DNA of 64,000 nucleotides from Haliotis rubra (taxonomy: Eukaryota), in contig NW_025767357.1 in the NCBI RefSeq assembly GCF_003918875.1, forward strand, positions 1,798,001 to 1,862,000. Reading direction: 5' to 3'. Both the position numbers and the translations under genes were made by a program. The notes under the pieces were generated by a model. That model did no database searches. It was not told the origin of the DNA and worked only from the letters and a program-made list of their open reading frames with translations. This document shows positions 4,942-53,146 of this stretch, piece by piece (within the stretch, counting starts at the first letter, position 1; every line of letters starts with the position of its first letter).

Positions 4942-6156
4942 TCAGTACAGTCCACACATGGCATAGAAGAAGGACATGCTGGCAAGAATGTTGACAATGG
5001 TGAACACCTTAAAGCCGAGTCTATCAAGCGCGGCAGCGATGTCCGACCCAAGAACCACTTTAATACCGGTGCTATCTCCATGTGTATCGGGAGCCTGGTC
5101 AATGGTTTTGACTTTGACTATGTCATCAGCAAGGATCTTGATCTTCTTGTCTGGCAAGAGATACGTCAGCAAGCGGGTTGCCCTTATGTACCTTGGGTCT
5201 CGGTGGTGGAATGCCAGGTTGACAACGGTGACGATGGTGGCCGCCATGCTGAGAAAGATTTCAGTAGCTAGATAGGCACTGAAGTAACATACTCCGTCTG
5301 AGTTCTCGGGAAGAGCGTCGTTGACGAGTGTGAGGAACACAGCATAGGAAAGCATAACAGAGATGCAGAGGGTGATCTTCTCTCCCGAGTTGGCAGGCAG
5401 AGCAAAGACGAGGGAGTTCAATAGAGACAGAAACACTATTGGCAGGATCATGTTGATAATGTAGAACAGGGTCTTACGTTTTATGTTTAAGGTGAATTCC
5501 ACACGGAAATGACGGCCCCTGTGTTGCCAAACCTTTTGTGGAACTATTTCTTCCAGCTCCCACTCGCCATTTTCCTCATACTTCATGTGCAATACCGGTT
5601 CTGGAGCTAGATCAAGGTTTACAATTTTCCTTTTACAGCTCAACTGCTGCAGGATCAGCTTGCAGGACTGGGTGTCGAAAGGATAGTGACGGACATCTAC
5701 CTTGCAGTAGGTCTTGTAAAAATCGCCAGGAAACCATACTATGGTACCTGTCGACTCCAGATAGACTTTCAAGTTCCTGTTACCAATTTGGCCGTAATTG
5801 GAAACGGCATTCTGCACGATGACGTCTGGGAGCCAGAGCTTGTCTGTTGGCACATAGATGACCTCCGTGTTGTATTCCTTCGGATTCCATTTGAGAAGAG
5901 GCTCCTTCCAAGTCAGGTCAAAAATGGCAGACAGACTTAGAACTTGATCCTTTTCGTTGAGATCCACCAACGAGTTAATACTCATCCAGACGTCAATGGT
6001 CCAGTTCGGAGAATTGTTTTGGTTTGGCCAAACCAGAGGGTCGTAATTCCTGAAGATATCTTTAAACAGTTGACTCTCGTTCTTTGGTACTGGCAAAGAT
6101 CCTGACAGTGCGGCACGACATACTGAAACAAGGACAACGAGCACACCCAGAAACAT
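4942..6156 (-). CDS. Atypical nAChR-like Cys-loop receptor subunit, group A copy 1 (404 aa, single coding exon)
   Basis: Signal peptide MFLGVLVVLVSVCRAALS; WLPDV loop A motif; Cys-loop CKVDVRHYPFDTQSC (C-x13-C); NGEWEL; M1 after KRKTLFY; SGEKITLCISVMLSYAVFL M2; M3; short cytoplasmic loop; M4 after LDRL. No YxCC in loop C. Confidence 0.95.
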   Translation of the reverse strand: MFLGVLVVLVSVCRAALSGSLPVPKNESQLFKDIFRNYDPLVWPNQNNSPNWTIDVWMSINSLVDLNEKDQVLSLSAIFDLTWKEPLLKWNPKEYNTEVIYVPTDKLWLPDVIVQNAVSNYGQIGNRNLKVYLESTGTIVWFPGDFYKTYCKVDVRHYPFDTQSCKLILQQLSCKRKIVNLDLAPEPVLHMKYEENGEWELEEIVPQKVWQHRGRHFRVEFTLNIKRKTLFYIINMILPIVFLSLLNSLVFALPANSGEKITLCISVMLSYAVFLTLVNDALPENSDGVCYFSAYLATEIFLSMAATIVTVVNLAFHHRDPRYIRATRLLTYLLPDKKIKILADDIVKVKTIDQAPDTHGDSTGIKVVLGSDIAAALDRLGFKVFTIVNILASMSFFYAMCGLY

Positions 6157-6585
6157 GTTGTGTGAACGCTGAATGAACTAATGATGTCTCTCTCAGGCAA
6201 TAACATATTTATCATAATAACGCTGGGTGTCTCCATTCACAGGGGGAGATTGGAAGGTACTTGATCTCGGGATGAGTCCTATAAGAAGATGACATTCGGA
6301 CATATTCTTTCAAATTGATACCTTGTAAAAGTTAAGTGTTATTTCTAACTGAAATTTATGAATGCCTGGACATCTGCTCCGTGAGAATAAAGAATATTAT
6401 AAGTAAAAACATCACCCCTTGGGAAATAGTAGACGTGTCCTCTTATAATTCGCATAGGCTATGGGAGCTTCACATACAATAACATCATCCCAGGCCAAAG
6501 AAATGTATTCATAGCCCAAACTGTTTAGTTTTCGTGATTCGGAGCGTTTGTTTAGTACAAGAGAACACAGTGACTCATTGTGGTC

Positions 6586-6593
6586 TGACGTCA
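6586..6593. promoter_or_regulatory. Putative CRE (TGACGTCA) upstream of group A copy 1; same site at 22864-22871 for copy 4
   Basis: Perfect palindrome at the homologous position in two diverged paralogues; reduced to CCCGTCA in copies 2 and 3. Confidence 0.35.
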
Positions 6594-7039
6594 AACTATT
6601 GTTCATTAATTTACCTTTGCGATTTTAGGAATTATTTTGTCATTACTGCACTTGCACGACTATCTTGTTAATTGTACCGTATAGTTACATGCAGGCGTTA
6701 AGGGATATGGCAAACCGTCCGCTTGAAGGCCAGGTGATGCATGCTTTTGGTATTTTCATACTCTTTAGTCGACGTCGTTCGAGCGACAATTAGCTGACAG
6801 TCAGCAGTTATTTATATATTTATATATTATGGAACGAAATGGAAAAAGATGATATCCAGACTGTAGATATTGCTTAGGTTTCAGTTTGAACCACATAGTG
6901 ACAACACGAATGATGTGAACAATAACGGGGATTCCAGCAGCTCGAGCTGTGCTGAAACGGGCCCCGATTCTGATAAAGTGAATAACACAGAATAGAGAGT
7001 ATATTAAGTTGTATGTTTCAGAAATTTATGATTATATTA

Positions 7040-7163
7040 TGGAATCCTAGAAGGGACATCGTCGCGTTGTCAAATTGTCGCGTTAAAGCGAAAAGGGGCA
7101 AAATTAACCAATGCGCGACAATGCGACCTTTTGGCCATTTGTAGCATTGTCCCTAGGATTCGA
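7040..7163. mobile_element. Small MITE-like inverted-repeat element
   Basis: Imperfect terminal inverted repeats TATGGAATCCTAG..GGGACA / TGTCCCTAGGATTCGATA with internal TGTCGCG/CGCGACA repeats. Confidence 0.45.
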
Positions 7164-9053: not shown

Positions 9054-9400
9054 GTGAGAACATGAATCGCAGACAAATCAGACATTGACAAAAGGAAGGA
9101 TTATTAAAATTTTGTTCTCGATCCTGATCTATAAATACATTGGTAGTGAGCAATACACAATGTGCGAAACAGTAAACAATCACTAATTTATGAAACAGTG
9201 ATGATTATTAATAAACTGTTAGAGAACATTTTGCAATATTAATCATTGTTTTGTTAAGCGAGAGTCAACTTAAGTCTTGGAAGTTGTGTAGTTTGCAACA
9301 GTGTACATTATGAGAGTACAACAAGTAAAAGGTTTTAAGGAACAACATCACTTTAAATGTCAATTTCACGTCTTACTATATGTATTGTTGACCTGGAGAA

Positions 9401-10621
9401 TCAGTACAGTCCACACATGGCATAGAAGAAGAACATGCTGGCAACAATGTTGACAATGGTGAACACCTTAAAGCCGAGTCTATCCAGCGCAGCAGCGATG
9501 TCCGACCCAAGAACCACTTTAATCCCTGTGCCTTCTTCGTGCGTATCGGGAGCCTGGTCAGTGGTTTTGACTTTGACTATGTCATCAGCAAGGATCTTGA
9601 TCTTCTTGTCTGGCAAGAGATACGTCAGCAAGCGGGTTGCCCTTATGTACCTTTGGTCTCGGTGGTGGAAGGCGAGGATGACAACGGTGACTATGGTGGC
9701 CACCATGCTGAGAAAGACTTCAGTAGCTAGATAGGCACTGAAGTAACATACTCCGTCTGAGTTCTCGGGAAGAGCGTCGTTGACGAGTGTGAGGAACACA
9801 GCATAGGAAAGCATAACAGAGATGCAGAGGGTGATCTTCTCTCCCGAGTTGGCAGGCAGAGCAAAGACGAGGGAGTTCAATAGAGACAGAAACACTATTG
9901 GCAGGATCATGTTGACAATGTAGAACAGGGTTTTACGTTTTATGTTTAAGGTGAATTCCACCCGGAAATGTCGGCTTCTGTGTTGCCAAACCTTTTGTGG
10001 AACTATTTCTTCCAGCTCCCACTCCCCATTTTCCTCATAATTCATGTGCAATACTGGTTCTGGAGCTAGATCAAGGTTTACAATCTTCTTTTCACAGCTC
10101 AACGGCTGCAGGATCAGGTTGCAGGACTGGGTGTCGAACGGATAGTGACGGACATCTACCTTACAGTAGGTCTTGTAAAAGTCCCCAGGAAACCATATTA
10201 TGGTACCTGTCGACTCCAGATAGACTTTCAAGTTCCTGTTACCAATTTGGCCGTAATTGGAAACGGCGTTCTGCACGATGACATCTGGGAGCCAGAGCTT
10301 GTCTGTTGGCACATAGATGACCTCCGTGTTGTATTCCTTCGGATCCCATTTGAGAAGAGGCTCCTTCCACGTCAGTCCAAACATGGCTGACAGACTTAGA
10401 ACTTGATCCTTTTCGCTGAGATCCACCAACGAGTTAATACTCATCCAGACGTCAATGCTCCAGTTCAATGAATTGTTTTGGTTTGGCCAAACCAGAGGGT
10501 CGTAATTCCTGAAGATATCTTTAAACAGCTGACTCTCGTTCTTTGGTACAGGCAAAGTTTCGGGGCCCGACATTTCTGCATGACATACTGAAACAAGGAC
10601 AACGAGCACACCCAGAAACAT
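9401..10621 (-). CDS. Atypical nAChR-like subunit, group A copy 2 (406 aa from MFLGV; an in-frame ATG at 10690 would add 23 aa)
   Basis: Close paralogue of copy 1 with the same motifs and an intact ORF. Start placed at the signal-peptide Met shared by all four copies. Confidence 0.93.
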   Translation of the reverse strand: MFLGVLVVLVSVCHAEMSGPETLPVPKNESQLFKDIFRNYDPLVWPNQNNSLNWSIDVWMSINSLVDLSEKDQVLSLSAMFGLTWKEPLLKWDPKEYNTEVIYVPTDKLWLPDVIVQNAVSNYGQIGNRNLKVYLESTGTIIWFPGDFYKTYCKVDVRHYPFDTQSCNLILQPLSCEKKIVNLDLAPEPVLHMNYEENGEWELEEIVPQKVWQHRSRHFRVEFTLNIKRKTLFYIVNMILPIVFLSLLNSLVFALPANSGEKITLCISVMLSYAVFLTLVNDALPENSDGVCYFSAYLATEVFLSMVATIVTVVILAFHHRDQRYIRATRLLTYLLPDKKIKILADDIVKVKTTDQAPDTHEEGTGIKVVLGSDIAAALDRLGFKVFTIVNIVASMFFFYAMCGLY

Positions 10622-10962
10622 GTTAAATGAACTGATGATGTCTTTCCCAGGCGATAGCACGTCTATGATTAAAATGTTGGGTGTCTCCATTTATCAGGGA
10701 GAATCGAAGGTACTTTATGTCAGAAGACACCCTTTTAAAGAAGATGCCATCCATTCGTATTCTTTCATATTTACAAAGAGCCAAGTGTTATTATTCATAA
10801 TTGTACTTCATTAATGCCATGACATCAGCGATAGCGACAATAGATAATATTTAAAGTAAAAATATTACCCCTTGGGAAACAGTAGACTTGTCCTCTCACA
10901 ATGTGCAGAGGCTGTGGGCGCTTGAAATATAATAGGAAGCATTATCTCAAACTAAAAAAATG

Positions 10963-10970
10963 TATTTATA
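10963..10970 (-). promoter_or_regulatory. Putative TATA box for group A copy 2 (equivalent at 16718-16725 for copy 3)
   Basis: GGGCTATAAATAC about 340 bp upstream of the signal-peptide ATG, inside a block conserved among group A copies. Confidence 0.4.
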
Positions 10971-14869: not shown

Positions 14870-15045
14870 ATATGTTACTGACTGGTGCTATTGGTTAGGC
14901 AGGATATGGTTACCTTTTCATTCTTTGATAGTCATTCACAAACACATGCTCTGTCATCATATCTAGTGATTGTCTGGTCCAGACCCGACTGTTCACAGGC
15001 CGCAATATACAGCTGGAATACTGTTGAATGCAGCGTCAAACAAAC
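14870..15045 (+). mobile_element. Decayed SINE family B
   Basis: GATTGTCTGGTCCAGAC..CCGCAATATACAGCTGGAATACTGTTGAATGCAGCGTCAAACAAAC; duplicated at about 20960-21135. Confidence 0.7.
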
Positions 15046-15159: not shown

Positions 15160-16380
15160 TCAGTACAGTCCACGCATGGCATAGAAGAAGAACATGCTGG
15201 CAACAATGTTGACAATGGTGAACACCTTTAAGCCGAGTCTATCCAGCATGGCAGCGATGTCCGACCCAACAACTACTTTAATCCCTGTGCCTTCTTCATG
15301 CGTATCGGGAGCCTGGTCAGTGGTTTTGACTTTGACTATGTCATCAGCAAGGATCTTGATCTTCTTGTCTTGCAAGAGATACGTCAGCAAGCGGGTTGCC
15401 CTTATGTACCTTTGGTCTCGGTGGTGGAAGGCGAGGATGACAACGGTGACGATGGTGGCCACCATGCTGAGAAAGACTTCAGTAGCTAGATAGGCACTGA
15501 AGTAACATACTCCGTCTGAGTTCTCAGGAAGAGCATCGTTGACGAGTGTGAGGAACACAGCATAGGAAAGCATAACAGAGATGCAGAGGGTGATCTTCTC
15601 TCCCGAGTTGGCAGGCAGAGCAAAGACGAGGGAGTTCAATAGAGACAGAAACACTATTGGCAAGATCATGTTGACAATGTAGAACAGGGTCTTACGTTTT
15701 ATGTTTAAGGTGAATTCCACCCGGAAATGTCGGCTTCTGTGTTGCCAAACCTTTTGTGGAACTATTTCTTCAAGCTCCCACTCCCCATTTTCCTCATAAT
15801 CCATGTGCAATACTGGTTCTGGAGCTAGATCAAGGTTTACAATCTTCTTTTTACAGCTCAACGGCTGCAGGATCAGCTTGCAGTACTGGGTGTCGAAAGG
15901 GTAGTGACGGACATCTACCTTGCAGTAGGTCTTGTAAAAGTCCCCAGGAAACCATATTATGGTACCTGTCGACTCCAGATAGACTTTCAAGTTCATGTTA
16001 CCAATTTGGCCGTAATTGGAAACGGCATTCTGCACGATGACGTCTGGGAGCCAGAGCTTGTCTGTTGGCACATAGATGACCTCCGTGTTGTATTCCTTCG
16101 GATCCCATTTGAGAAGAGGCTCCTTCCACGTCAGGCCAAACATGGCTGACAGACTTAGAACTTGATCCTTTTCGTTGAGATCCACCAACGAGTTAATTCT
16201 CATCCAGATGTCAATGCTCCAGTTCAATGAATTGTTTTGGTTTGGCCAAACCAGAGGGTCGTAATTCTTGAAGATATCTTTAAACAGCTGACTCTCGTTC
16301 TTTGGTACAGGCAAAGTTTCGGGGCCCGACATTTTTGCATGACATACTGAAACAAGGACAACGAGCACACCCAGAAACAT
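15160..16380 (-). CDS. Atypical nAChR-like subunit, group A copy 3 (406 aa from MFLGV; in-frame upstream ATG at 16449)
   Basis: Recent duplicate of copy 2 (about 15 aa differences), intact ORF, Cys-loop CKVDVRHYPFDTQYC, GEK-M2. Confidence 0.93.
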   Translation of the reverse strand: MFLGVLVVLVSVCHAKMSGPETLPVPKNESQLFKDIFKNYDPLVWPNQNNSLNWSIDIWMRINSLVDLNEKDQVLSLSAMFGLTWKEPLLKWDPKEYNTEVIYVPTDKLWLPDVIVQNAVSNYGQIGNMNLKVYLESTGTIIWFPGDFYKTYCKVDVRHYPFDTQYCKLILQPLSCKKKIVNLDLAPEPVLHMDYEENGEWELEEIVPQKVWQHRSRHFRVEFTLNIKRKTLFYIVNMILPIVFLSLLNSLVFALPANSGEKITLCISVMLSYAVFLTLVNDALPENSDGVCYFSAYLATEVFLSMVATIVTVVILAFHHRDQRYIRATRLLTYLLQDKKIKILADDIVKVKTTDQAPDTHEEGTGIKVVVGSDIAAMLDRLGLKVFTIVNIVASMFFFYAMRGLY

Positions 16381-21215: not shown

Positions 21216-22435
21216 TCAGTACAGTCCAGACATGGCATAGAAGAAGGACATGCTGGCAACGATGTTGACAATGGTGAACACCTTAAAGCCGAGTCCATCC
21301 AGCGCAGCAGCGATGTCGGACCCAAGAACCACTTTAATCCCTGTGCAATCATCATGTGTATCGGGAGCCTGGTCAATGGTTTTGACTTTGACTATGTCAT
21401 CAGCATTGATCTTGATCTTCTTGTCTGGCAAGAGATACGTCAGCAAGCGGGTTGCCCTTATGTACCTTGGGTCTCGGTGGTGGAATGCCAAGTTGACAAC
21501 GGCGACGATGGTGGCCGCCATGCTGAGAAAGATTTCAGTAGCTAGATAGGCACTGAAGTAACATACTCCGTCTGAATTCTCGGGAAGAGCGTCGTTGACG
21601 AGTGTGAGGAACACAGCATAGGAAAGCATAACAGAGATGCAGAGGGTGATCTTCTCTCCCGAGTTGGCAGGCAGAGCAAAGACGAGGGAGTTCAATAGAG
21701 ACAGAAACACTATTGGCAGGATCATGTTGACAATGTAGAACAAGGTTTTACGCTTCATGTTTAAGGTGAATTCCACACGGAAATGACTGCCCCTGTCTTG
21801 CCAAACCTTTTGTGGAACTATTTCTTCCAGCCCCACTCCCCATTTTCCTCATAATTCATGTACACAATTGGTTCTGGAGCTAGATCAAGGTTTACAATCT
21901 TCCTTTCACAGCTCAACGGCTGCAGGATCATCTTACAGTACTGGGTGTCGAAAGGGTAGTGACGGACATCTACCTTGCAGTAGGTCTTGTAAAAGTCCCC
22001 AGGAAACCATATTATGGTACCTGTCGACTCCAGATAGACTTTCAAGTTCCTGTTACCAATTTGGCCGTAATTGGAAACGGCGTTCTGCACGATGACGTCT
22101 GGCAGCCAGAGCTTGTCTGTTGGCACATAGATGACCTCCGTGTTGTATTCCTTCGGATCCCATTTGAGAAGAGGCTCCTTCCACGTCAGTCCAAACATGG
22201 CTGACAGACTTAGAACTTGATCTTTTTCGTTGAGATCAACCAACGAGTTAATACTCATCCAGACGTCAATGCTCCACTTCGGAGAATTGTTTTGGTTTGG
22301 CCAAACCAGAGGGTCGTAATTCCTGAAGATATCTTTAAACAGTTGACTCTCGTTCTTTGCCACTGGCAAAGATTCGGAGCCTGACAGTGCGGCACGACAT
22401 ATTGAAACAAGGACAACGAGCACACCCAGAATCAT
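21216..22435 (-). pseudogene. Atypical nAChR-like subunit, group A copy 4, split by a 1-nt deletion near 21832 (pseudogene or assembly error)
   Basis: ORFs 21818-22435 (extracellular domain) and 21216-21836 (TM domain) overlap in different frames. TGG-GAG-CTG of the paralogues reads TGG-GG-CTG here. No other disablements seen. Confidence 0.85.
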
Positions 22436-23389
22436 GTTGTGTGAACGTTGAATGAACTAATGGTGTATGTCCCAGGCGATAGCACTTCTATGATTAAAAC
22501 GTTGGGTGGTTCCATTCACCAGGGAGAATAGATTGAGCTTGATTTCCTATTAGAAGATGACATTCGTCAGTATTCCATCAAAACTACATCCTGGGAAAGT
22601 TGACATTGATTATTGAAGTTCGTTAATGCCCTTACATCAGCTGCAGCAAGATTAACAATAGTAATTATTACCCCTATTAACCCCCCTTCCCCGGAAATAG
22701 TGGACTTGTCCTCTCACAATTTGCCCAGCCTAAGGAAGCGTGAAATATAATGTGGGATGCATTATCGTTAGCCAAAGCCATTTATTCACGCTCAAAAGTA
22801 TCGGTGTTTGCGTGATTCAGATTGTTTGCTTAGTAAAATACCAAATGCTGAATCATTCTTGTCTGACGTCAAATTATTGTCTATGAATGTACTTTTCCCA
22901 TCAACGAGACACAGAGCGAAAGGTTAAAATCATTATGTCAATACTACACTTGAACGACTATCGTGTAAATTGTACAGTATTGTTATGCGCCTACTTGCAA
23001 ACTGAAACTATTAAACTATTACACCAAAACGCAAAAGAATTCATTGTGACACCATCAAGTACTGAAATTGTTATACAAATAACAGATGTTATTTTCTATT
23101 AGGTAAGTTGAAAAGCAATAACAAATCACTACAAGGCAATTTCAAAGGCAGTACTAAATAGAGTGACAGTGCAAAATAGTCAGTGGTAATTGCTGTCGGT
23201 GATGATAATATTAAAAGTGGTCAAAGCAACAATGGTGAAAGCTTCCCAAAACGGACTCCTACTGGCTATAATCAGGATCATCAAACAACATCTTGTCTTT
23301 GCGTAATGTGAGGAGTCATTGAGGAACCTTTCCTCATTCTCAACAAAAACAATGTCTTACAACATTGCAAATAAAATACACTGTCATAA

Positions 23390-24015
23390 TATGTTGAGTT
23401 ATGCGTGTGATTAAAAGAATACAAACCAAGACCCTTGCGAATGACACCTTGTGGAATGGCAGCCTATTCTTCCTGAATATCTTGTAGTAATTGCCATAAA
23501 GCCTGTAGTCTTGGGTGACGAAGAGCAAGTGGCAGCTGATGTTTATGTTCTCAGTTCCAAGGGACATCAATAATGTGTGCGGACACATATATTGTCGCTT
23601 GATGCTGGAAACCCAGGACCAGCTGATGACACACACCTGTTAGGATTCCCTGGATATGTACAAACTAGTTCTTAGCCTATAACGCTCATACCATTGCCGA
23701 CAAAGGAACATTCACCCATTACCCATTTGAAGAAAAAAAATGTTAGCATCATTGAACAAAGCGTTACGGCAACGGTGGAGAAACCACTGATGACGTTAGC
23801 AAAATAAATGCAAAAAGTCGATTAGTTTAAGAAAACGCAGGATCTTATTGCTCGGCTTCTGTCAACGAAAATGGCTATGGATGAACAATAGGGTCACAGG
23901 TTAGGATTTTGTGTTGCAGTGAACGTTGCAGTGAGTGTCATTTTTCTAAGGTGAAAGACCTGCATGTCGCGATCATGTTCTTCTGTTGTGAGGGCAGATT
24001 CCTTGTGTTTCAATG
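23390..24015 (-). mobile_element. Ancient Tc1-like relic (older paralogue of 13.4 and 19.0 kb)
   Basis: RHPRLQALWQLLQDIQEE*AAIPQGVIR resembles the Tc1 C-terminal LQEEWxxIPQ motif. Aligns with 19420-19760. Confidence 0.6.
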
Positions 24016-24426
24016 CATTTGTAAATGCTTCGATGTTCTTACGTTTCAGTTGCAAATCGTTTCATAATGACAGTATAAGCCCGGTAGTGAATTATATACT
24101 AGGAAACCATTTGTGCTAGAATAGTTCTTGATCTTGAGCCATTTCATGCATACAACTATTTTCAGTGGTGCATTAGACACATCCTGAAAAATCATCTATC
24201 AGTGATTACACAAACCATTCACAAACCAATTGGAACACTGAATTGTAACAGAGTCTGAACCACTTGACATTGTTAATGGTGAATGTGGTGTTTTAATCTT
24301 GGTTCTGCATTGTGGTCGCACTGCAAAACTGTTGCAATGCTTGATTGTCTACTATTCTAACAGCATGTGAACTGAACCCAGTTTCCACTGTGACAACTGG
24401 GGATGAACAGCCATAAAACTCACTGA

Positions 24427-24570
24427 GGGGTGATGGGGTAGCTTAGATGTAAAAGCGTTGGCTCGTCACGCCGAAAACCCGGGTTCGATTGGGTACAATG
24501 TGTGAAGCCCATTTCTGGTGTCCCCCGACGTTATATTGCTGGAATGCTGCTAAACTCACTCACTCACTCA
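24427..24570 (+). mobile_element. SINE family A
   Basis: Head, GGGTTCGATT, body and (ACTC)n tail. Confidence 0.88.
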
Positions 24571-26169
24571 TTGACACTGCCATATTCCTAGCAATTGTCA
24601 CCGAAATGACAACTGACACAGAGAACAGCTCAGCAATGTCACCCTTAAAATTTGTATGAAATACCTTGTCATCAAACGCTACCTCTTTTGACTCGATGCG
24701 AGTCCTTTTTGATAAACATGATTCCGTTTGGTTCTTGGACATTGGTTCTTGATCCTCAGAGTGTGCAGTCGTCTAAGGTGGAGCATTTCACTTTGAGTGA
24801 AACCATCCACTATCCCCATTGTCAGAATCCACAGACTGTGGCTCCTTATTCTTGATTCTCTCTTGTAGTAAGCAATATTCCTGTACAAACGTGTTTTGTC
24901 TTCTATGTCAAATATGACCTATTTTTACCAAATCAGTAAAATAGATCCATCACTCGCATTCGTTCTTCTACATCAAGATGAAACAAATCAGTGAATACCC
25001 ATGTTCATTAATCCGATGGAATCGCTTTTCTAATTGTCCACACTTTTAATCCAAGTATTGATTATCTTAATGATTTTGTAGCTGTTGGACTATATCCATC
25101 CTTTGTTGCCTTCACCACTTAGCTTCATGTTTATTCTGTAGATTGACAGTGCAGGACATCGACTGATTTGGCCTCGGTTAGTGTCCTTTCATCTCTCCTC
25201 GTTTGGTGACTCATACTCAAGTAAGCTTATGTTGTTGTGCATTGTCCGATGTCCTTAGATATGTCTGTCATTACCAAACACCCCCTCAAACTGAAACTTT
25301 GTATTGTGTCATTGAAAAATTATCACTAATTTCCAAAATCTAGAAATGTTGCTCATTACTAGGTATTTATTATGCATATAATATGTTGTTTACCATATTC
25401 TAATTGTGATCTAATCTAACTCTGACACCAAAACACTACTGTTTGTATGGTATTGCATTTTTGAATGAAAGTACAAGGCCTCTGATGCTGAAACGTTCCA
25501 TTGATAATGCCAGTTATCTTAATTAAGACTCCAAACAGAAATCCGTATCGTATTATACGCGGATTACTATGCCATTCCGCATGCATCATTATTTTATTTG
25601 ATGTGCAGGGATCATGTACCATTGTATTGGCATATTTTCAAATTGATCAGTCAACAAGCTTTGACCAGTTGTAAGTTTCGTAGTTCTGTCATCTCCGAAA
25701 CTACAAGGCCCATAATAAACCTCCTCTTAAAGTGTCTGTTTATAGTCTTCGAAGAATCTTTATCTGAATTAAATCATTGCTCTTTCATAGTGAAGGAGAG
25801 CTTGTATATTTGGAATGATAATGTATGAATTGGTTCAGTCGACGTCACAGGACATCTGATTCTCTGCAAAGAACAATTTGTCTGTCCGAACTGAGATGCG
25901 TCTGTATACACAACAGTAAAATCATTTAAAAGCAGAAATACAGTCGGTGTGAGATGAGCGCAAAAGTGTTTTCAGTTCACACATGCAGCACTACGTGACA
26001 GTTATCCTTACAATCTAAATGATGTTATTGATCACACCGCCTGTATATTGACATTGATCTCAGCTGGTCGTAGTTAAATGTGGTAATCTGGGCAGCGTTA
26101 TTCTCCATGTTACGTTTCTATTACTGACGTTTCTGATTTCACCCTACTTTTGTAATGTAAAACGGACAC

Positions 26170-26195
26170 TTTTTAATGACTATTTTTCTTTACAG
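26170..26195 (+). other. Putative 3' splice acceptor of a 5' UTR intron for group B copy 1
   Basis: TTTTTAATGACTATTTTTCTTTACAG|AATT. Comparable acceptors precede the other group B genes (CCTTAG|ATG at 33154; TTTATTTTGACAG at 51904). Confidence 0.55.
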
Positions 26196-26388
26196 AATTC
26201 AGGTGTGGTGACTTTCAGAAGGCAGTGTATAACACCCACCATATATTCATCATTAGTCAGGGCATCTGCTGGATGGTAGAAGATCCAAGAGGGTTTCACA
26301 CGAGCTTCCCAACTGTATCCAACCTGTCCCAAACAGGAAAAGAAGACACTCTAATCAGATATAAGGATCTTTGATCACCAAGGTGACA

Positions 26389-27591
26389 ATGTCTAATCTA
26401 TATTTTGTTCTAGCAGCATGCATCTCGATTTGTGGTACGAGCGGTCGACAATCAGGAACTGATCAAGGTCCTCTGTACACCTTGTATAATGACCTACTGG
26501 AACACTACAAACCGTATATCAGGCCCAGGAAGAATCCTAACGATACCGTGGAGGTAGTAGTTTCTTATAGCATTGTATCAGTGGAGGCCTTGGACGAAAC
26601 CACACAGACAGTAGCTTCATCTGCAGTCATCCAATTTGAATGGAAAGATGACCTGATGACCTGGAACTCAAGTGACTATGGTGGTGTACAATTTATAAAT
26701 ATACCTGTGGAGAAACTGTGGTTTCCGGACTTGAGTTTGACAAATGGATTAGAAGACTTATCTTTGATTCTTCCCAGCGGAGAAATAGCAAGGGTGAACG
26801 ATGATGGATTGATCCAGTGGTACCATGGGATGAAGAAATGTACCAAGTGCTCTCTAGACATGACCAAATTTCCATTTGACACCCAAACATGCAGTATCAA
26901 TCTCATTCAGTGGGTTACTGTAATTTCCCAAGTCAATTTGACAGCAGGTGGGGTTCACATTGAATCGTCAATGTTTCAACAAAACGGAGAATGGGAAATA
27001 TTGGACAAATCAAAAGAGGTTATTGTTCATACATATACTGAGGTTTACATCCAGACGGAGCTGGTTTTCACATTCGTCTTCAAACGGAAATACCTGTATT
27101 ATATCATCACCAACATCCTTCCCGGCATGCTTCTCTCCGTCCTTAACCTTGGTGTGTTTCTACTTCCGCCTGAATCAGGGGAGAAGGTATCGCTATGTAT
27201 TTCCATAGTGCTGTCCTATGCAGTGTTCTTGTCTGTCATTGGAGGGAGTCTACCGGAAGTGTCAGACACTGTCAGCATCTTCAGTGTCTACCTCTTGACA
27301 ATGATGTTCCTCAAAGTCGCAACAACTTTGATAACAGTCTTCGTTTTGCAAGTTTACCATCAGACCACCGAAGAAGCAGATTCCCTCTCAAACCGCCTCA
27401 TGCAAAGACAAATACAAGACATCTCTAAATCAGATTATGAACAAGAGAGTACACTAGTAAAACAGCAGACGCCTTTGAAGAAGACAGGGAAACAACTCGC
27501 AAGATATTTAAACAAGATTGGTTTCACGATAGTATTTTTGCTCACAGTCATGATCACCATTCTGTGTTTTGCACTGTTGTTGAAAGAATAG
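26389..27591 (+). CDS. Atypical nAChR-like subunit, group B copy 1 (400 aa from ATG MSNLY)
   Basis: Signal peptide, YKPYIRP, WFPDL, Cys-loop CSLDMTKFPFDTQTC, NGEWEI, SGEKVSLCISIVLSYAVFL M2, four TMs. No vicinal Cys in loop C. The ORF-track TTG start is replaced by the first ATG. Confidence 0.95.
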   Translation: MSNLYFVLAACISICGTSGRQSGTDQGPLYTLYNDLLEHYKPYIRPRKNPNDTVEVVVSYSIVSVEALDETTQTVASSAVIQFEWKDDLMTWNSSDYGGVQFINIPVEKLWFPDLSLTNGLEDLSLILPSGEIARVNDDGLIQWYHGMKKCTKCSLDMTKFPFDTQTCSINLIQWVTVISQVNLTAGGVHIESSMFQQNGEWEILDKSKEVIVHTYTEVYIQTELVFTFVFKRKYLYYIITNILPGMLLSVLNLGVFLLPPESGEKVSLCISIVLSYAVFLSVIGGSLPEVSDTVSIFSVYLLTMMFLKVATTLITVFVLQVYHQTTEEADSLSNRLMQRQIQDISKSDYEQESTLVKQQTPLKKTGKQLARYLNKIGFTIVFLLTVMITILCFALLLKE

Positions 27592-33154: not shown

Positions 33155-34327
33155 ATGCTTAAGATGTACCTAGAATTCATCCTCTGTCTGTGTCTGTGTG
33201 ATACATTTTGTCTTCAGTCTGGTTCTGATCAGGGTCCTCTGTACAGCTTGTATAACGACCTTCTGGAGCACTACAAGCCGTATATCAGACCCAGGAAGAA
33301 TCCTAATGAGACAGTAGAGGTTGTGGTTTCCTACACCATGACATCAGTGGAAGCCTTGGAGGAAACTACCCAAACAGTTGATTCATCTGGATTCTTAACA
33401 CTTCAGTGGACAGATGAGCTGATGACCTGGAACTCAAATGAGTATGGTGGTGTAAATTATATAAACATACACGTGGAGAAACTGTGGATCCCGGACTTGA
33501 GTTTGACAAATGGATTCGGCGGCCTCTCTTTGATATTACCCATCGGGGAAAAGGCAAGGGTATGGAGCAATGGAAGTGTAACGTGGTTTAGAGATATGAA
33601 CAAACATACAAAATGTTCTTTAGACATGCGACATTTTCCTTTTGACACCCAGACATGCAGTATCAATCTCATTCAGTGGGTCACTGACATAAGACAAGTC
33701 AATATGACTGCAGGTCTGGTTGAAATTGAACCGTCAATGTTTAAAAGAAATGGAGAATGGGAAATAACTGGAAAATCCAAGGACACCTTTATTCATACAT
33801 ATAGTGAGTATATGGTTCAGACGGAGATTGTGTTCACGTTCGTCTTCAAGCGGAAGTATCTGTACTACATCATCACCAACATCCTTCCCGTCATGCTTCT
33901 CTCCGTCCTTAACCTTGGTGTGTTTCTACTTCCGCCTGAATCTGGGGAGAAGGTATCGCTGTGTATATCCATAGTGCTGTCCTACGCAGTGTTCCTGTCC
34001 GTCATTGGAGGAAGTCTACCAGAGGTGTCAGATACCGTCAGCATCTTCAGTATCTACCTCCTCGCAATGATGTTTGTCAAAGTAGCTACAACTTTGCTGA
34101 CGGTTTTAGTGTTGAATACTTACCATGGAGATTCGGAAGAACAGTGTTCCCCGCCAGAACCAAATAACCAATACGATGATACTCTTTCCAATAGGTTAGA
34201 GAGGAGAATATTGAAGAAGGGGAACAAAGAGCTGGCAAAACGTTTAAACAAAATCGGTTTCGTCGTTATATTCTCCTTGACAGTTTCTGTTTCCATTGTG
34301 TGCTTTGTCCTACTATTTACACAGTAG
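33155..34327 (+). CDS. Atypical nAChR-like subunit, group B copy 2 (390 aa)
   Basis: Signal peptide, Cys-loop CSLDMRHFPFDTQTC, GEK-M2, four TMs, very short M3-M4 loop, intact single-exon ORF. Confidence 0.95.
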   Translation: MLKMYLEFILCLCLCDTFCLQSGSDQGPLYSLYNDLLEHYKPYIRPRKNPNETVEVVVSYTMTSVEALEETTQTVDSSGFLTLQWTDELMTWNSNEYGGVNYINIHVEKLWIPDLSLTNGFGGLSLILPIGEKARVWSNGSVTWFRDMNKHTKCSLDMRHFPFDTQTCSINLIQWVTDIRQVNMTAGLVEIEPSMFKRNGEWEITGKSKDTFIHTYSEYMVQTEIVFTFVFKRKYLYYIITNILPVMLLSVLNLGVFLLPPESGEKVSLCISIVLSYAVFLSVIGGSLPEVSDTVSIFSIYLLAMMFVKVATTLLTVLVLNTYHGDSEEQCSPPEPNNQYDDTLSNRLERRILKKGNKELAKRLNKIGFVVIFSLTVSVSIVCFVLLFTQ

Positions 34328-46700: not shown

Positions 46701-48385
46701 AATGGCCACAACCCACTCTGGGGTGGCACTAATACAAACACCAAAGGTAAATTACTGGAGGATTTTATTTCAAACAACGACTTATGCATTTATACTAACG
46801 GTTCAAATACGTATCTTCATCCTGGCACAGGAACATATTCTGCTCTTGATTTGTCAATTACTGACTCAAACCTATTAAGTGAATTTGAATGGTCAGTCGA
46901 TGACGACCTCTGTGGAAGTGGCCATTTCACAACAATACTAAAACCCGTGAATCCAACTGATGTTCCTCCATCATCAAGATGGAATTTTAAAAAGGCCAAC
47001 TGGCCTTTATATGAAACTCTTTGCGCTGACAAACTAAAACCTGAAGTTTTTAATGACATTCCTCATGCCATAAAATGTTTTTCAGATGAACTAAATAACA
47101 TAGCTGACGAGTGTATCCCAGAGTCCTCTGCAATTCCTCACGTACGAAAACCATGGATTACCAATGATTGCAAACAAGCTAGGAAGGCACGGAAGAAAGG
47201 CGAGCACTATTTCCGTCGCCATCCTATGGTCCACAATTTGGACAAATTTACAATTTTAAACGTCAAAGCACGACGTACTTTCAACCAAGTGAACGCCAAT
47301 CTTGGCGAAACTATATATCAAAAATTAATTCGCGCACACCTATATCAAAGGTGTCGAATATGATCCAAAAAATCAAGGGTAAGGGGTATTAAATCTAGTA
47401 TTCACCATCTAAAAGATGGGAACCAATTATTGACCAATAAATCAAATATTGCAAATAAACTTGATGAGACATTGGCTAAACATTCTTCCTCATCTAATTA
47501 TGTACCTGAATTCCAAAAATATAAAAAACAGCAAGAAAAGAAAGCTATCAATTTCAATTCAGATAATGGGAAAGATTACAACGAAACTTTTTCGATACAT
47601 GAGCTTCATACTGCTCATGTTTAGAGACGCTCTTACATATTTTTGATGTCATTTGGACATCTGGAAAATGTCCTTCGTCGTGGCGTGATGCTATTATTGT
47701 TCCCATACCTAAACCTGGACGTGATCATACTGATCCCTCTAATTATAGACCAATTTCACTGACTAGCTGCGTTTGAAAAACCATGGAACGCATGATCAAC
47801 AATCGACTTGTTTGGTACTTGGAAACCAATAACCTAATAACAGATATACAATGTGGTTTCCGTAAAAACAGAAGTACTATTGATCATTTAGTGCGTTTAG
47901 AATCTTTTGTTAAGAATGCCATAATTAATAAACAACATACAGTGTCGATCTTTTTCGATTTAGAAAAAGCATACGGCACGACATGGAAGCATGGGATTTT
48001 AAAAGATTTACATGACTTTGGATTACGAGGCCGTTTGCCTCAATTTATATCCAACTTTTTAAATAACAGGCAATTTCAAGTCCGCGTGGGTTCTACCCTG
48101 CCTGATCATTACAATCAGGATCAGGGTGTTCCACAAGGCAGTATTTTGTCTGTGACTTTGTTTAGCATCAAGATCAACAGTTTATCAAAGGTTTTAACCG
48201 ATTCAATCGATGGATCACTTTTTGTGGATGATTTTAATATTTTTTGTCTTGGTAAAAATATGCATACTATTGAACGACAACTGCGGTTGTGTTTAAACAA
48301 AATCAATAAATGGTGTCTTGAAAACGGCTTTAAATTTTCTAAATCCAAAACTAATTGGATACACTTCTGCCGTAAATACAAACCG
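43745..48385 (+). mobile_element. Nimb/I-group LINE retrotransposon, 3'-truncated and disrupted
   Basis: GC-rich 5' UTR. ORF1 about 44999-46299 (WPRFLV..KLNPFTVAKGI..LRSGSLLIEC; zinc knuckles CYACQKYGHGSKSC and CVNCSGNHPSSSKDC). ORF2 from 46299 with APE endonuclease (IIQWNCRGL, GDVNGH) and RT (NYRPISL, FFDLEKAY, GVPQGSILS, FVDD). Frameshifts and stops; ends within RT. Confidence 0.92.
44045..44870 (+). mobile_element. L2/CR1-group LINE 3' fragment nested in the Nimb-like 5' UTR
   Basis: VKNLGVYLDSGL..RLDYCNSL..LQKIQNSAARL..LHWLP..RSLRS, 3' tail ending CATTATTAT; GC-rich UTR sequence on both sides. Confidence 0.88.
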
Positions 48386-48389
48386 CAGT

Positions 48390-49051
48390 TTCACATGTTG
48401 TGTGCAGCTGCACGGCCACCATAGGCCACCATCAATGACGTCACGTCGTCTGGCACGTGCATGAGCGTCTCCAATATGCATATCGACTGGCAATCGGACT
48501 TTAATCTAATTTATGTTAAAAAACCCACTGACAGTAAGTTGTAATAGGGAATGATGGAGTATAAACGAATATCGTGGGTAATTCTTCTTCTTCAGCCTAG
48601 CTTTGGGATTTTCATAACACATGTGTGCATGTCTCTTTCATATGTGTCCGACTCGGAATGATCTGAGCATTTCACCGGCCTAAATCTGTCTCTTTACTTG
48701 GAAAACGGAAGCAATGGTGGCTCTTTCCATTGTTCGATGATTCCGTGAATCCCCGCGCAACGGAATACACCATCGTACCATTTACAAAAACGACAGTAAC
48801 AACACGATTTGTATTACTGTAGCGCTTGTTCTTTGGCAATATGGCGGACGCTTGTCACATGTGACGCCCCGACTGGAAAGGTCACGTGAATTCCAGTGGA
48901 ATATGCATAATGGCCGAAGCTCAGATAACAGAAACTGTTTTCGCGATAAAAAACATAATAAACCATATTTTTGAAACACAAATTGGGGTACATGTTTCTG
49001 ATGACTTTATCTTTGACCCAGAAAATTATTGCAATTGTCTAGTATTCTCCT
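48390..49051 (-). mobile_element. Kolobok-like DNA transposon 5' end with decayed THAP domain
   Basis: TTAA|AGGAGAATACTAG terminus at 49051-49055; MVYSVARG..GKSHHCFRFP..CSDH..YERD..RLKKK..LPTIF (about 48560-48775). Confidence 0.65.
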
Positions 49052-50490: not shown

Positions 50491-50610
50491 GTAATTCGGG
50501 AACGTATGGCATAAGTCAAAATAGGGAATTGCATCGGACATAATTTTTGTCACTGATGCATCAAATTTGGAACTTTCTTCCACATGTCTACCGTAAAACT
50601 TCGTGGTCCT

Positions 50611-50853
50611 TGGTTGGTTGGTTAGTTTTTTAATGTCGCACGCAGCAATATTCCAGCTTTATGGCGGCGGTCTCTAAATAATCGAGTCTGGACCAGACAA
50701 TCTAGTGATCAACAGCATGAGCATCGATCTAGGCAATTGAGATACGATGACATGTGTCAACCAAGTCAGCAAGCATGACCACCCCATCCCGTCCGTCGCC
50801 TGTACTACCGGTATGGATTGCTGAAGATCAATTCTAACCCGAATCTTCACGGG
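50611..50853 (-). mobile_element. SINE family B
   Basis: CCCGTGAAGATTCGGGTTAGAATTGATCTTCAG... to (CAAC)n tail. Confidence 0.88.
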
Positions 50854-51937
50854 AATGGGCAAATAATCGGGCTTATGGGTAAATACTTTGGTAAATCATA
50901 TTTGTATGACAGTGTGAAATAGAGCTACGTGTTTTAACATATTGAGTCTATTTAAAAAAAAGTAATGAAATGGTTTGTTTTCCAAATGCTTTGAATTCCA
51001 ACTTTTAGTCCAAAGGAATAAGAAGAATGGACTATCATGGCAGCACTTGAGGTTTCTCATCCTAACTGTTGTTATAGATTTGTTTTTAATGGCATTTCTG
51101 TCTTTGGAAGAAAGGGGTTCTATTTTGTGCATCTACGTGTGAACAGTTGAACAATTTCAACGATAATAAGGATAAATATTTTCCAATCTCCCTTTGATCT
51201 AAACTCAGTGGAATGATCAAGGTGCTGAACCAACAGAAATATATAACACGTTTGTGCAGAGTAAATATATTCCTGTCCCTTATTTGTCCACAGCAATCAG
51301 CAGGACACAGATGTAATTGGCATCTAATGAATGCATTTCCGATTCCATGACACGTACTCATATCAATTGTTAGCTTCTATGCTTTGAAATTCTGGACATA
51401 AGCTCGGTTTATACTCGATCAATTATTTCTGTATGACACCAATCTCTTCTAGATTATTAGCTGACTCCACTGTCCTTGGTTGTCATTAGCTCTGTTACAC
51501 TGAAACTAAAACTTACTTTTAATTGCCTTATGCGTACACAATCTTAAGCAGCTCTGATGTTAATATTGATAAGCCATTGGTGAAATGTGTACATTGGTAC
51601 CAATACATTGGTGTATAGGAATAAATGAGCTACAGTTTGGTGTGGTTGCTGGTATAGAAGACATTATCACATAGACAACCACAGTGCTACTAATTCGACT
51701 CGATACTATCAATATGCAAACACCTGATGACAAGGTATTGGAATACGTGTGTAGTGAAACAGCGAATTGATTAACAATTGATTTTATCTCGGCCGTTAGT
51801 TATAATGATGCGTTTACGTTGGTTCCACATTGTGGTTGCTTCCATGGTTACTCCTGGTGTGTAGCACCGAGGAAACTATTTTATATACATATTTATTTTG
51901 ACAGACATTTACTGTGATCGTAAACCCTTGGTTCGTT

Positions 51938-53146
51938 ATGCCGGACAAGACTATTGTCTTAACTCTGTGCCTATGCATGTGTGTTGCATATGGACTTCAG
52001 CTTGGTTCTGATCAGGGTCCTCTTTACAGATTGTATAACGACCTACTGGAGCACTACAAGCCGTATATCCGACCCAGGAAGAATCCTAATGAGACAGTAG
52101 AGGTTGTGGTTTCCTACAGCATGACATCAGTGGAAGCCTTGGAGGAAACTACCCAAACAGTTGATTCATCTGGATTCTTAACACTTCAGTGGACAGATGA
52201 GCTGATGACCTGGAACTCAAATGAGTACGGTGGTGTAAATTATATAAACATACACGTGGAGAAACTGTGGATCCCGGACTTGAGTTTGACAAATGGATTC
52301 GGCGGCCTCTCTTTGATATTACCCATCGGGGAAAAGGCAAGGGTTTGGAGCAATGGAAGTGTAACGTGGTTTAGAGATATGAAGAAACATACAAAATGTT
52401 CTTTAGACATGCGACATTTTCCTTTTGACACCCAGACATGCAGTATCAATCTCATTCAGTGGGTCACTGACATAAGACAAGTCAATATGACTGCAGGTCT
52501 GGTTGGAATTGAATCGTCAATGTTTAAAAGAAATGGAGAATGGGAAATAACTGGAAAATCCAAGGACACCTTTATTCACACATATAGTGAGTATATGGTT
52601 CAGACGGAGATTGTGTTCACGTTCGTCTTCAAGCGGAAGTATTTGTACTACATCATCACCAACATCCTTCCCGTCATGCTTCTCTCCGTCCTTAACCTTG
52701 GTGTGTTTCTACTTCCGCCTGAATCAGGGGAGAAGGTATCGCTGTGTATTTCCATAGTGCTATCCTACGCCGTGTTCTTGACTGTCATTGGAGGAAGTCT
52801 ACCGGAAGTGTCAGATACCGTCAGCATCTTCAGTATCTACCTCCTGACCATGATGTTCCTCAAAGTCGCAACAACGTTGCTGACGGTTTTCGTGCTTAAT
52901 GTGTACCACGGATGCACTGAACAAAGAGTATCGTGTGCTAACACGTGTATTATAGAGCAACAGGAGGTACACGGTTTAAACACCTTTCGTGAACAGGATT
53001 CACTCAAGAAAATATTTCAAGTAAAATTACAAAAGAAGGGAAACAGACAACTTGCAAAACTTCTGAACAAAATATGTTTTGGATTTATATTTACTCTTAC
53101 TGTCCTTGTGACATGTTCATGTTTCATCCTGCTCGTTCGTCAGTAG
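51938..53146 (+). CDS. Atypical nAChR-like subunit, group B copy 3 (402 aa from ATG MPDKT)
   Basis: Same motifs. Extracellular domain and M1-M2 nearly identical to 33155-34327. First ATG at 51938 follows a splice-acceptor-like site at 51904. Confidence 0.95.
   Translation: MPDKTIVLTLCLCMCVAYGLQLGSDQGPLYRLYNDLLEHYKPYIRPRKNPNETVEVVVSYSMTSVEALEETTQTVDSSGFLTLQWTDELMTWNSNEYGGVNYINIHVEKLWIPDLSLTNGFGGLSLILPIGEKARVWSNGSVTWFRDMKKHTKCSLDMRHFPFDTQTCSINLIQWVTDIRQVNMTAGLVGIESSMFKRNGEWEITGKSKDTFIHTYSEYMVQTEIVFTFVFKRKYLYYIITNILPVMLLSVLNLGVFLLPPESGEKVSLCISIVLSYAVFLTVIGGSLPEVSDTVSIFSIYLLTMMFLKVATTLLTVFVLNVYHGCTEQRVSCANTCIIEQQEVHGLNTFREQDSLKKIFQVKLQKKGNRQLAKLLNKICFGFIFTLTVLVTCSCFILLVRQ

What the first reader, a model, noticed from the sequence alone, without database searches (positions are those of the whole stretch)
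4942..53146. Tandem array of intronless, non-cholinergic Cys-loop channels: candidate gastropod chemoreceptor family
Seen: seven single-coding-exon subunits in two subfamilies with an intact Cys-loop, GEK motif and Leu9' gate. Aligned by eye to alpha7, loop A Tyr is Q (group A) or T (group B); loop D Trp is I/M (A) or V/F (B); loop B Trp is L in A and kept in B; loop C has no YxCC in any copy. The M3-M4 loop is only about 40-60 aa. Established: these aromatic residues form the acetylcholine box, cephalopod chemotactile receptors are intronless, tandemly clustered AChR derivatives lacking them, and molluscs have expanded nAChR-like repertoires. Inference: these are cation channels gated by non-ACh, possibly environmental, ligands such as contact taste, algal food or larval settlement cues, with birth-and-death dynamics typical of sensory receptor clusters.
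Basis: partly seen in the sequence, partly recalled or inferred. Interest (0 to 1): 0.88.

Follow-up and report, generated by a model that had tools for sequence, protein, structure and literature searches.

The report
Abalone orphan nicotinic-like channel gene cluster
A 48-kb stretch of the blacklip abalone genome carries seven intron-free genes for nicotinic-receptor-like cation channels that have lost most or all of the acetylcholine-binding residues; this kind of gene expansion is already known in molluscs, and a taste or smell role is still an untested idea.

Summary
The window (Haliotis rubra, QXJH01000065.1) carries seven single-ORF Cys-loop subunit genes. Four are group A on the minus strand, one of them broken by a 1-bp deletion. 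Three are group B on the plus strand. All keep the Cys-loop, four TM helices, GEK and Leu9'. Alignment to alpha7 confirms every residue call: A has lost all five aromatic-box residues, and B keeps the loop B Trp and perhaps one loop C Tyr.

An IQ-TREE places both groups in a mollusc-only clade of short (~400 aa) nAChR-like proteins, apart from the conserved acr-16/alpha7-like receptors.

The genes are under purifying selection (ortholog dN/dS 0.05-0.23). The head-to-head A|B junction and the B gene order are conserved in H. asinina, and the junction also in H. cracherodii. Binding loops are more variable than the rest of the domain, the reverse of true ACh receptors. B2 and B3 share a gene-converted ligand-binding domain.

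Intronless tandem nAChR expansions are published (Jiao 2019). A 2026 preprint already proposes divergent gastropod nAChR clades as ionotropic chemosensors. This scan also found a similar, larger cluster elsewhere in this genome (s1-329443).

The chemoreceptor reading is plausible but untested. I could not reach cephalopod CR sequences or any expression data.

The parts
4942..6156 (-). Group A gene A1, 404 aa, intact single ORF
   Evidence: ORF list. Pfam LBD plus TM. 92% aa identity to A2 by tblastn.
9401..10621 (-). Group A gene A2, 406 aa from the conserved MFLGVL start. An upstream in-frame ATG extends the ORF to 10690.
   Evidence: AF2 model has mean pLDDT 87.6 with the full pLGIC fold.
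15160..16380 (-). Group A gene A3, 406 aa, a near copy of A2 (96% aa identity)
   Evidence: A2/A3 dS 0.058, dN/dS 0.30.
21216..22435 (-). Group A gene A4, otherwise full length, broken by a 1-bp deletion in a G run near 21831
   Evidence: DNA alignment of the four A copies. Annotated publicly as a 205-aa fragment (P0330).
26389..27591 (+). Group B gene B1, 400 aa, head-to-head with A4
   Evidence: Orthologues P0036 (H. asinina, 89%) and P0037 (H. cracherodii) occupy the same position.
33155..34327 (+). Group B gene B2, 390 aa
   Evidence: AF2 model has mean pLDDT 92.2. Exact protein found only in the H. rubra genome record.
51938..53146 (+). Group B gene B3, 402 aa
9373..21154 (.). Two copies of a 5.76-kb tandem duplication unit (9373-15064 and 15132-21154, 95-97% identical), each carrying one A gene plus its flanks
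   Evidence: Self-blastn.
22436..26388 (.). Intergenic region between the divergent A4 and B1 genes. It is collinear with H. asinina (73-81% identity). Three short blocks are also kept in H. cracherodii: 24678-24796, 25035-25254 and 25989-26141.
   Evidence: blastn against L001 and L002. Synteny.
33195..34111 (+). Gene-conversion tract shared with B3 (51978-52894, 96% nt identity), covering the ligand-binding domain to M3. The signal peptide and the ICD plus M4 tails of B2 and B3 are saturated at synonymous sites.
   Evidence: LBD dS is 0.054 against tails above 1.6. The B2 tails match the H. asinina 387-aa gene while its LBD does not.

Best explanation
The cluster belongs to a gastropod branch of the mollusc-only, intronless, tandemly duplicated nAChR-like expansion.

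Shown:
- The genes encode subunits of pentameric cation channels, with the full fold, the Cys-loop, the -1' Glu of the GEK motif and the Leu9' gate.
- Selection has kept them working across Haliotis species.
- The inter-subunit pocket no longer matches the acetylcholine aromatic box.

Inferred:
- They open on binding some ligand other than acetylcholine at the remodelled pocket.
- Group A offers an aliphatic and basic pocket (Q, L, I/M, plus a His/Arg-rich short loop C).
- Group B offers a principal face that still has the loop B Trp.
- The conserved head-to-head A|B arrangement suggests the two may be co-expressed and co-assemble.

Where they act is not shown. A peripheral chemosensory role is the leading single candidate, at roughly one in three. 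An internal non-cholinergic transmitter or metabolite receptor is about equally likely.

The array grew by segmental tandem duplication (group A) and has been reshaped by gene conversion (B2/B3).
For: - Family and fold: Pfam and PDB matches and AF2 models with pLDDT 88 and 92 that match nAChR chains at Z about 33.
- Pore and box residues. The loop B Trp is kept in 118 of 138 related proteins, so its loss in group A is unusual.
- Phylogeny (IQ-TREE, LG+C20): A and B sit in a mollusc-only clade (100/99), inside a 37-row clade (99/97). They are separate from the acr-16-like clade that keeps the full box.
- Purifying selection: dN/dS is 0.26-0.41 between paralogues. Between orthologues it is 0.11-0.23 in the LBD and 0.05-0.16 in TM1-3, at dS 0.18-0.55.
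- Conserved synteny and single-exon gene calls in two other Haliotis species.
- Binding loops more variable than the rest of the LBD. Group B: identity 0.58 against 0.75, OR 2.9, p 0.002. Group A: 0.84 against 0.90, p 0.045. The acr-16-like and alpha7 controls show the opposite (0.86 against 0.79-0.83).
- Tandem unit and conversion tract.
Against: - No expression, ligand or assembly data exist for these genes. Nothing was found in the literature searches, and no transcript contig carries them.
- Variable binding loops fit a disused site as well as a diversifying one.
- Group B keeps the loop B Trp and has Tyr residues in loop C, so choline-like or amine ligands, even ACh in a heteromer, remain possible.
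- The LBDs of B2 and B3 are nearly identical, which is not what diversification of ligand range predicts.
Confidence: 0.62

Rival explanations
1. These are chemoreceptors, analogous or related to cephalopod chemotactile receptors. They would be expressed in tentacles, epipodium, osphradium or competent larvae and gated by environmental cues such as algal or settlement compounds.
For: - They share the published hallmarks of cephalopod CRs: derived from nAChRs, ACh box lost, intronless, tandemly arrayed (CR hallmarks as described in PMC13174522 and PMC11526382; this cluster).
- The binding loops are the most variable part of the LBD.
- The clade is lineage-specific.
- A 2026 preprint reports a CR-like clade reaching into gastropods and proposes divergent nAChR clades as ionotropic chemosensors.
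Against: - No expression or ligand data.
- No detectable special affinity to solved CRs: CRT1 and CRB1 are absent from the top 50-60 sequence and fold matches, below vertebrate nAChRs and even 5-HT3A.
- No cephalopod protein among 30 named near relatives.
- The B genes are stable orthologues with a gene-converted LBD rather than a fast-turnover repertoire.
- In bivalves the expanded nAChRs show developmental, immune and stress expression rather than sensory expression (PMC6896357).
Confidence: 0.28
2. They are accessory or complementary subunits. They do not bind agonist themselves but co-assemble with canonical alpha subunits encoded elsewhere, tuning ordinary cholinergic receptors.
For: - Loop C lacks the vicinal cysteines in both groups and is four residues shorter in group A, as in non-alpha subunits.
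- The best single PDB match of A2 is the Torpedo beta chain, an accessory subunit.
- A relaxed binding site is expected for a subunit that does not form one.
- The genome also has box-intact acr-16-like subunits in Haliotis (P0010).
Against: - Complementary subunits that form ACh sites keep the loop D Trp, which is lost here.
- Accessory subunits are usually conserved one-to-one, not lineage-specific tandem families.
- The very short intracellular loop differs from known heteromeric partners.
Confidence: 0.18
3. They are decaying retrogene copies without function.
For: - A4 carries a frameshift.
- Jiao 2019 reports that intron-poor nAChR genes are more often unexpressed.
Against: - Six of seven ORFs are intact.
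- Orthologues are intact in species separated by dS 0.3-0.55, with dN/dS 0.05-0.23.
- All structural motifs are kept.
Confidence: 0.03

Closest known systems
Molluscan intronless, tandemly arrayed nAChR expansion (Jiao et al. 2019, BMC Genomics, PMC6896357)
   Same: Single-exon genes in tandem arrays; lineage-specific clades; many members without the principal ACh-binding residues; growth by duplication of already intronless genes.
   Different: That work centred on bivalves and did not treat Haliotis (no mention in its text). This cluster adds a gastropod case with two subfamilies in a conserved head-to-head arrangement, and complete loss of the aromatic box in one of them.
Cephalopod chemotactile receptors (CRT1, CRB1; van Giesen 2020, Allard 2023, Kang 2023, as summarised in PMC11526382 and PMC13174522)
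   Same: Cation channels derived from nAChRs that do not use the ACh box; intronless; clustered; binding-site residues evolve fast.
   Different: Kinship is not shown: no CR sequence was reachable, and solved CRs rank below vertebrate nAChRs in every search. The CR pocket is aromatic and hydrophobic (Y58, W122, F124, F192 in CRT1). Group A's pocket residues are aliphatic, polar and basic. Sensory expression and ligands are known for CRs and unknown here.
Alpo4, orphan nAChR-like receptor of the annelid Alvinella pompejana (eLife 2023, PMC10338036)
   Same: Lophotrochozoan nAChR-like homologue without the loop C Cys pair; not gated by ACh or serotonin; ligand unknown.
   Different: Alpo4 keeps the aromatic residues of loops A, B, C and D. 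The abalone proteins have lost most (B) or all (A) of them.
Conserved acr-16 / alpha7-like nAChR subunits
   Same: Same fold, Cys-loop, GEK and Leu9'; 24-28% identity to frog alpha7 in the MAFFT alignment, 30-35% to these subunits in local alignments.
   Different: Those keep W55, Y93, W149, Y188, the Cys pair and Y195. They have long M3-M4 loops, binding loops that are the best-conserved part of the LBD, and they form a separate clade.
Divergent nAChR and 'CR-like' clades of the MolluscaGenes preprint (2026, PMC13174522)
   Same: Gastropod nAChR-like sequences with substituted ligand-binding residues, explicitly proposed there as possible ionotropic chemosensors.
   Different: The preprint is transcriptome-based, does not mention Haliotis in its text, and gives no genomic arrangement. 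Which of its 15 clades holds these genes could not be determined here.

Membership tests
Cys-loop pentameric ligand-gated ion channels, nAChR/5-HT3 cationic branch | Extracellular ligand-binding domain plus a four-helix transmembrane domain | tested here: met
   Pfam PF02931 and PF02932 in all copies. AF2 models match nAChR chains at Z about 33 and TM about 0.8.
Cys-loop pentameric ligand-gated ion channels, nAChR/5-HT3 cationic branch | Cys-loop disulphide pair with 13 intervening residues | tested here: met
   Invariant C153 and C167 (A2 numbering) across 23 and 58 homologues.
Cys-loop pentameric ligand-gated ion channels, nAChR/5-HT3 cationic branch | Cation-type M2: -1' Glu (GEK) rather than PAR, and a Leu9' gate | tested here: met
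   E at -1' and L at 9' in all window copies.
Acetylcholine-gated nAChR (agonist-binding subunit) | Vicinal Cys pair in loop C (alpha subunits) | tested here: not met
   Absent in all seven copies.
Acetylcholine-gated nAChR (agonist-binding subunit) | Aromatic box: loop A Tyr, loop B Trp, two loop C Tyr, loop D Trp | tested here: not met
   Group A: Q, L, R/K, H, I/M (0 of 5). Group B: T, W, Y or V/I (alignment-dependent), Q, V/F (1 to 2 of 5).
Mollusc-specific intronless tandem nAChR expansion (Jiao 2019) | Coding sequence without introns | tested here: met
   Continuous ORFs from signal peptide to M4. Single-exon gene calls for orthologues. Introns in the 5' UTR cannot be excluded.
Mollusc-specific intronless tandem nAChR expansion (Jiao 2019) | Tandem arrays formed by local duplication | tested here: met
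   Seven genes in 48 kb; a 5.76-kb unit duplicated at 95-97% identity.
Mollusc-specific intronless tandem nAChR expansion (Jiao 2019) | Placement in a mollusc-restricted clade apart from conserved bilaterian subunits | tested here: met
   IQ-TREE clade of 49 rows, support 100/99. All named members are gastropods or bivalves.
Cephalopod chemotactile receptors (CR) | Membership of the CR clade in a phylogeny | not testable with these tools
   No cephalopod CR sequence could be obtained. Solved CRs are absent from the top 50-60 matches of five searches.
Cephalopod chemotactile receptors (CR) | Intronless, clustered, ACh-binding residues lost | tested here: met
   These features are shared with the wider molluscan expansion and so are not specific to CRs.
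Cephalopod chemotactile receptors (CR) | Expression in peripheral sensory epithelium | not testable with these tools
   No transcript contigs carry these proteins. No published abalone data were found.
Cephalopod chemotactile receptors (CR) | Gating by poorly soluble environmental ligands, not by ACh | not testable with these tools
   Needs electrophysiology.

The most novel reading that the evidence does not exclude
The head-to-head A|B gene pair, conserved across Haliotis, encodes the two faces of a heteromeric non-cholinergic channel. This channel would have arisen in gastropods independently of cephalopod chemotactile receptors and would sense external cues such as food, contact or larval settlement signals. 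Group B would give a Trp-bearing principal face. Group A would give a rebuilt pocket rich in basic residues, suited to an anionic or zwitterionic ligand. That would be a second, convergent recruitment of nicotinic receptors into chemosensation.
Probability: 0.13. Interest if true: 0.75.

Novelty: new member of a known kind. Interest (0 to 1): 0.35.

Why it matters
If one of these channels were deorphanised, it would show what the very large molluscan nAChR-like expansions are for. It would also show whether turning a neurotransmitter receptor into an environmental sensor happened more than once in molluscs. For abalone this touches on feeding and larval settlement cues, which matter for aquaculture and restocking.

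As it stands, the cluster is a well-defined candidate set: six intact genes in two subfamilies, with conserved orthologues. It is not a new kind of system.

Tried and rejected
- Reaching cephalopod CR sequences for a joint tree failed by every route. I tried two single-protein searches and one profile search of the 5.8-billion-protein set, a full HMMER profile search of 1.84 billion representatives, naming of 30 near relatives, sequence and profile searches of the PDB, and Foldseek and VIA fold searches. The van Giesen 2020 paper was not held.
- Transcript evidence: exact-protein look-ups found only the genome record for B2 and nothing for A3.
- The ESM Atlas look-alike search gave only generic pLGIC clusters.
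- The idea that B partners were deleted from the upstream A units (note s1-327991) has no support. There are no B-like remnants between the A genes, and the A2/A3 unit holds only an A gene and its flanks.
- Pocket geometry could not be analysed because model coordinates are not exposed to scripts.
- A formal site-model test (PAML or HyPhy) was not possible. A contingency test on codon columns was used instead. It cannot separate positive selection from relaxed constraint.


Full report
WHAT IS THERE

The window comes from the blacklip abalone, Haliotis rubra (assembly GCA_003918875.1, contig QXJH01000065.1). It holds eight long ORFs (seven genes, A4 being split in two) that match the two Pfam domains of neurotransmitter-gated ion channels. 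A tblastn of the window against itself finds these seven copies and no further fragments.

- Group A, minus strand: A1 (4942-6156), A2 (9401-10621), A3 (15160-16380), A4 (21216-22435).
- Group B, plus strand: B1 (26389-27591), B2 (33155-34327), B3 (51938-53146).

Group A copies are 88-96% identical in protein. Group B copies are 66-83% identical. A and B share about 30-35%.

Each ORF runs without interruption from a hydrophobic signal peptide to M4, so the coding sequence has no intron. A 5' UTR intron cannot be excluded.

A4 has one missing base in a G run near 21831, which splits it into two overlapping ORFs. The public annotation shows the same break (P0330). It may be a young pseudogene or a homopolymer error in the assembly.

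RESIDUE CALLS

I checked them again on a 138-protein alignment.

- Loop A Tyr93 is Q in group A and T in group B.
- Loop B Trp149 is L in A and retained in B.
- Loop D Trp55 is I or M in A and V or F in B.
- No copy has the vicinal cysteines. Loop C is four residues shorter in A.
- The -1' Glu of GEK and Leu9' are present everywhere.
- The Cys-loop cysteines are invariant.

The loop B Trp is kept in 118 of the 138 related proteins, so its loss in Haliotis group A is unusual even within this family. The Gigantopelta relative of group A still has it.

The position equivalent to Tyr188 in group B depends on the alignment (Tyr, Val/Ile). Group B therefore has one, perhaps two, of the five box residues.

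AlphaFold models of A2 and B2 are confident (pLDDT 87.6 and 92.2). They superpose on muscle, alpha4beta2 and alpha7 chains over nearly their whole length. The segment between M3 and M4 is short, about 35-65 residues.

WHERE THE GENES BELONG

A profile search of 1.84 billion representative proteins gave 27,078 hits. The best ones are mostly proteins of about 400 residues, plus gene models that fuse two to four such units, as expected for tandem arrays.

A FastTree of 138 proteins and an IQ-TREE of 61 proteins under LG+C20 agree.

- Groups A and B lie in a clade supported at 100/99. All its named members are gastropods or bivalves: Haliotis, Gigantopelta, Patella, Littorina, Babylonia, Physella, Pinctada, Sinanodonta, Mercenaria, Solemya and Ylistrum.
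- Inside it, a clade supported at 99/97 holds both lineages. The A lineage comprises Haliotis, Gigantopelta, Littorina and Babylonia. The B lineage comprises Haliotis, Gigantopelta and Patella.
- The acr-16-like clade (Pecten, Haliotis, Aplysia), which keeps the complete aromatic box, is separate. So are vertebrate alpha7 and echinoderm alpha9/10-like proteins.

SELECTION AND GENOME DYNAMICS

Pairwise dN/dS between paralogues is 0.26-0.41.

Between orthologues, at synonymous distances of about 0.18-0.55:

| Gene | LBD dN/dS | TM1-3 dN/dS |
|---|---|---|
| B1 | 0.11-0.18 | 0.05-0.11 |
| Group A | 0.21-0.23 | 0.12-0.16 |

These are working genes, though less constrained than typical synaptic receptors.

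In H. asinina the order is A (minus), B1 orthologue, a 387-aa B gene, then a 414-aa B gene (plus), which is the same as A4, B1, B2, B3 here. In H. cracherodii the A | B1 head-to-head junction is also present. The intergenic DNA between A4 and B1 is collinear with H. asinina, and three short blocks persist in H. cracherodii.

Group A grew recently. A2 and A3 sit in a 5.76-kb unit duplicated at 95-97% identity that includes the flanks.

B2 and B3 are mosaics. Their ligand-binding domains differ at only five amino-acid-changing sites (dS 0.054), while their signal peptides and their ICD plus M4 tails are saturated. The tails of B2 match the H. asinina 387-aa gene, whereas its ligand-binding domain does not. 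The simplest reading is a gene conversion that copied the B3 ligand-binding domain into B2.

'Birth and death' thus describes group A. Group B shows stable orthology plus concerted evolution.

BINDING LOOPS AGAINST THE REST OF THE DOMAIN

I used the alpha7 definitions of loops A to F and compared the loops with the rest of the ligand-binding domain.

| Set | Loop identity | Rest of LBD identity | Test |
|---|---|---|---|
| Group B, 12 Haliotis proteins | 0.58 | 0.75 | OR 2.9, p 0.002 |
| Group A | 0.84 | 0.90 | p 0.045 |
| Molluscan acr-16-like (control) | 0.86 | 0.79 | not significant |
| Vertebrate alpha7 (control) | 0.86 | 0.83 | not significant |

In group B the ratio of amino-acid-variable codon columns to synonymous-only columns is 45:13 in the loops against 52:50 elsewhere (p 0.0013). 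In the two control sets the loops are, if anything, the better conserved part.

So the orthosteric site is no longer held by the constraint that acts on ACh receptors. The test cannot say whether that reflects diversification of ligand range, as reported for octopus CRs, or simple relaxation of an unused site.

HOW IT MOST LIKELY WORKS

Shown: a complete cation-type pLGIC architecture under purifying selection, with a pocket that lacks the cation-pi box.

Inferred: the subunits assemble into pentamers that open on binding a ligand other than acetylcholine.

- Group A presents Gln, Leu, Ile/Met, a conserved extra Cys two residues after the loop B position, and a short loop C rich in His, Arg and Lys.
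- Group B retains the loop B Trp, so a cationic amine is still conceivable for it.
- The conserved divergent A|B arrangement suggests, but does not show, co-regulation and possible co-assembly.

Where the channels act is open. I put a peripheral chemosensory role at about 0.28 and an accessory-subunit role at about 0.18. Most of the remainder goes to an internal non-cholinergic transmitter or metabolite receptor.

COMPARISON WITH WHAT IS KNOWN

Jiao et al. 2019 (PMC6896357) already showed that molluscan nAChR genes are massively expanded, tend to be intronless and tandemly arrayed, and often lack the principal ACh-binding residues. They reported developmental, immune and stress expression in bivalves.

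Cephalopod chemotactile receptors are the precedent for a sensory role.

The MolluscaGenes preprint of May 2026 (PMC13174522) describes a 'CR-like' clade reaching into gastropods, bivalves and chitons. It explicitly proposes that divergent nAChR clades could add an ionotropic component to gastropod chemosensation. The concept is therefore already in print.

The annelid orphan Alpo4 shows that such receptors can resist deorphanisation.

This scan has also already reported a larger cluster of similar genes elsewhere in the same genome and judged it a known kind (s1-329443). The H. rubra proteins P0044-P0046, sister to group B in my tree, may belong to it.

LIMITS

I could not obtain any cephalopod CR sequence, so the key phylogenetic question is open. 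The only indication is negative and weak: solved CRs never appear among the top 50-60 sequence or fold matches, where vertebrate nAChRs and even 5-HT3A do. No expression data could be reached.

VERDICT

The non-cholinergic inference is well supported for group A and moderately supported for group B. The chemoreceptor role remains a reasonable hypothesis that others have already voiced. The cluster is a new member of a known kind.

Noticed in passing
window 40490-42391: A 1.9-kb satellite of about 19 copies of a 98-bp unit (93-97% matches), with strong G-over-C skew, between B2 and B3.
   Followed up: partly
window 46299-48424 (+): Remains of a non-LTR retrotransposon between B2 and B3. One ORF has an AP-endonuclease domain (PF14529, PF03372) and one has reverse transcriptase (PF00078). 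The insertion accounts for part of the wide 17.6-kb spacing between B2 and B3.
   Followed up: partly
window 3675-4030, 38942-39299 (reverse), 62785-63138: Three copies of a roughly 355-bp dispersed repeat at about 95% identity, probably a SINE-like element.
   Followed up: no
window 34434-35204 (-): A 256-aa ORF just downstream of B2 with no Pfam match. Its sequence looks like the C-terminal tail of a LINE ORF2. The public annotation calls a 135-aa gene there (L003).
   Followed up: partly
window 33195-34111 and 51978-52894: B2 and B3 share a 917-bp tract at 96% identity that stops at the signal peptide on one side and after M3 on the other. This is a clean example of gene conversion limited to the ligand-binding and pore-forming part.
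   Followed up: yes
window 10622-10690 and 16381-16449 (-): A2 and A3, but not A1 or A4, have an in-frame upstream ATG that adds 23 residues ahead of the signal peptide. The public model of A3 instead starts at a downstream Met and lacks the signal peptide. The true start needs transcript data.
   Followed up: partly
window 32169-32487 and 57685-58077: Two further minisatellites, with 38-bp and 29/58-bp units.
   Followed up: no
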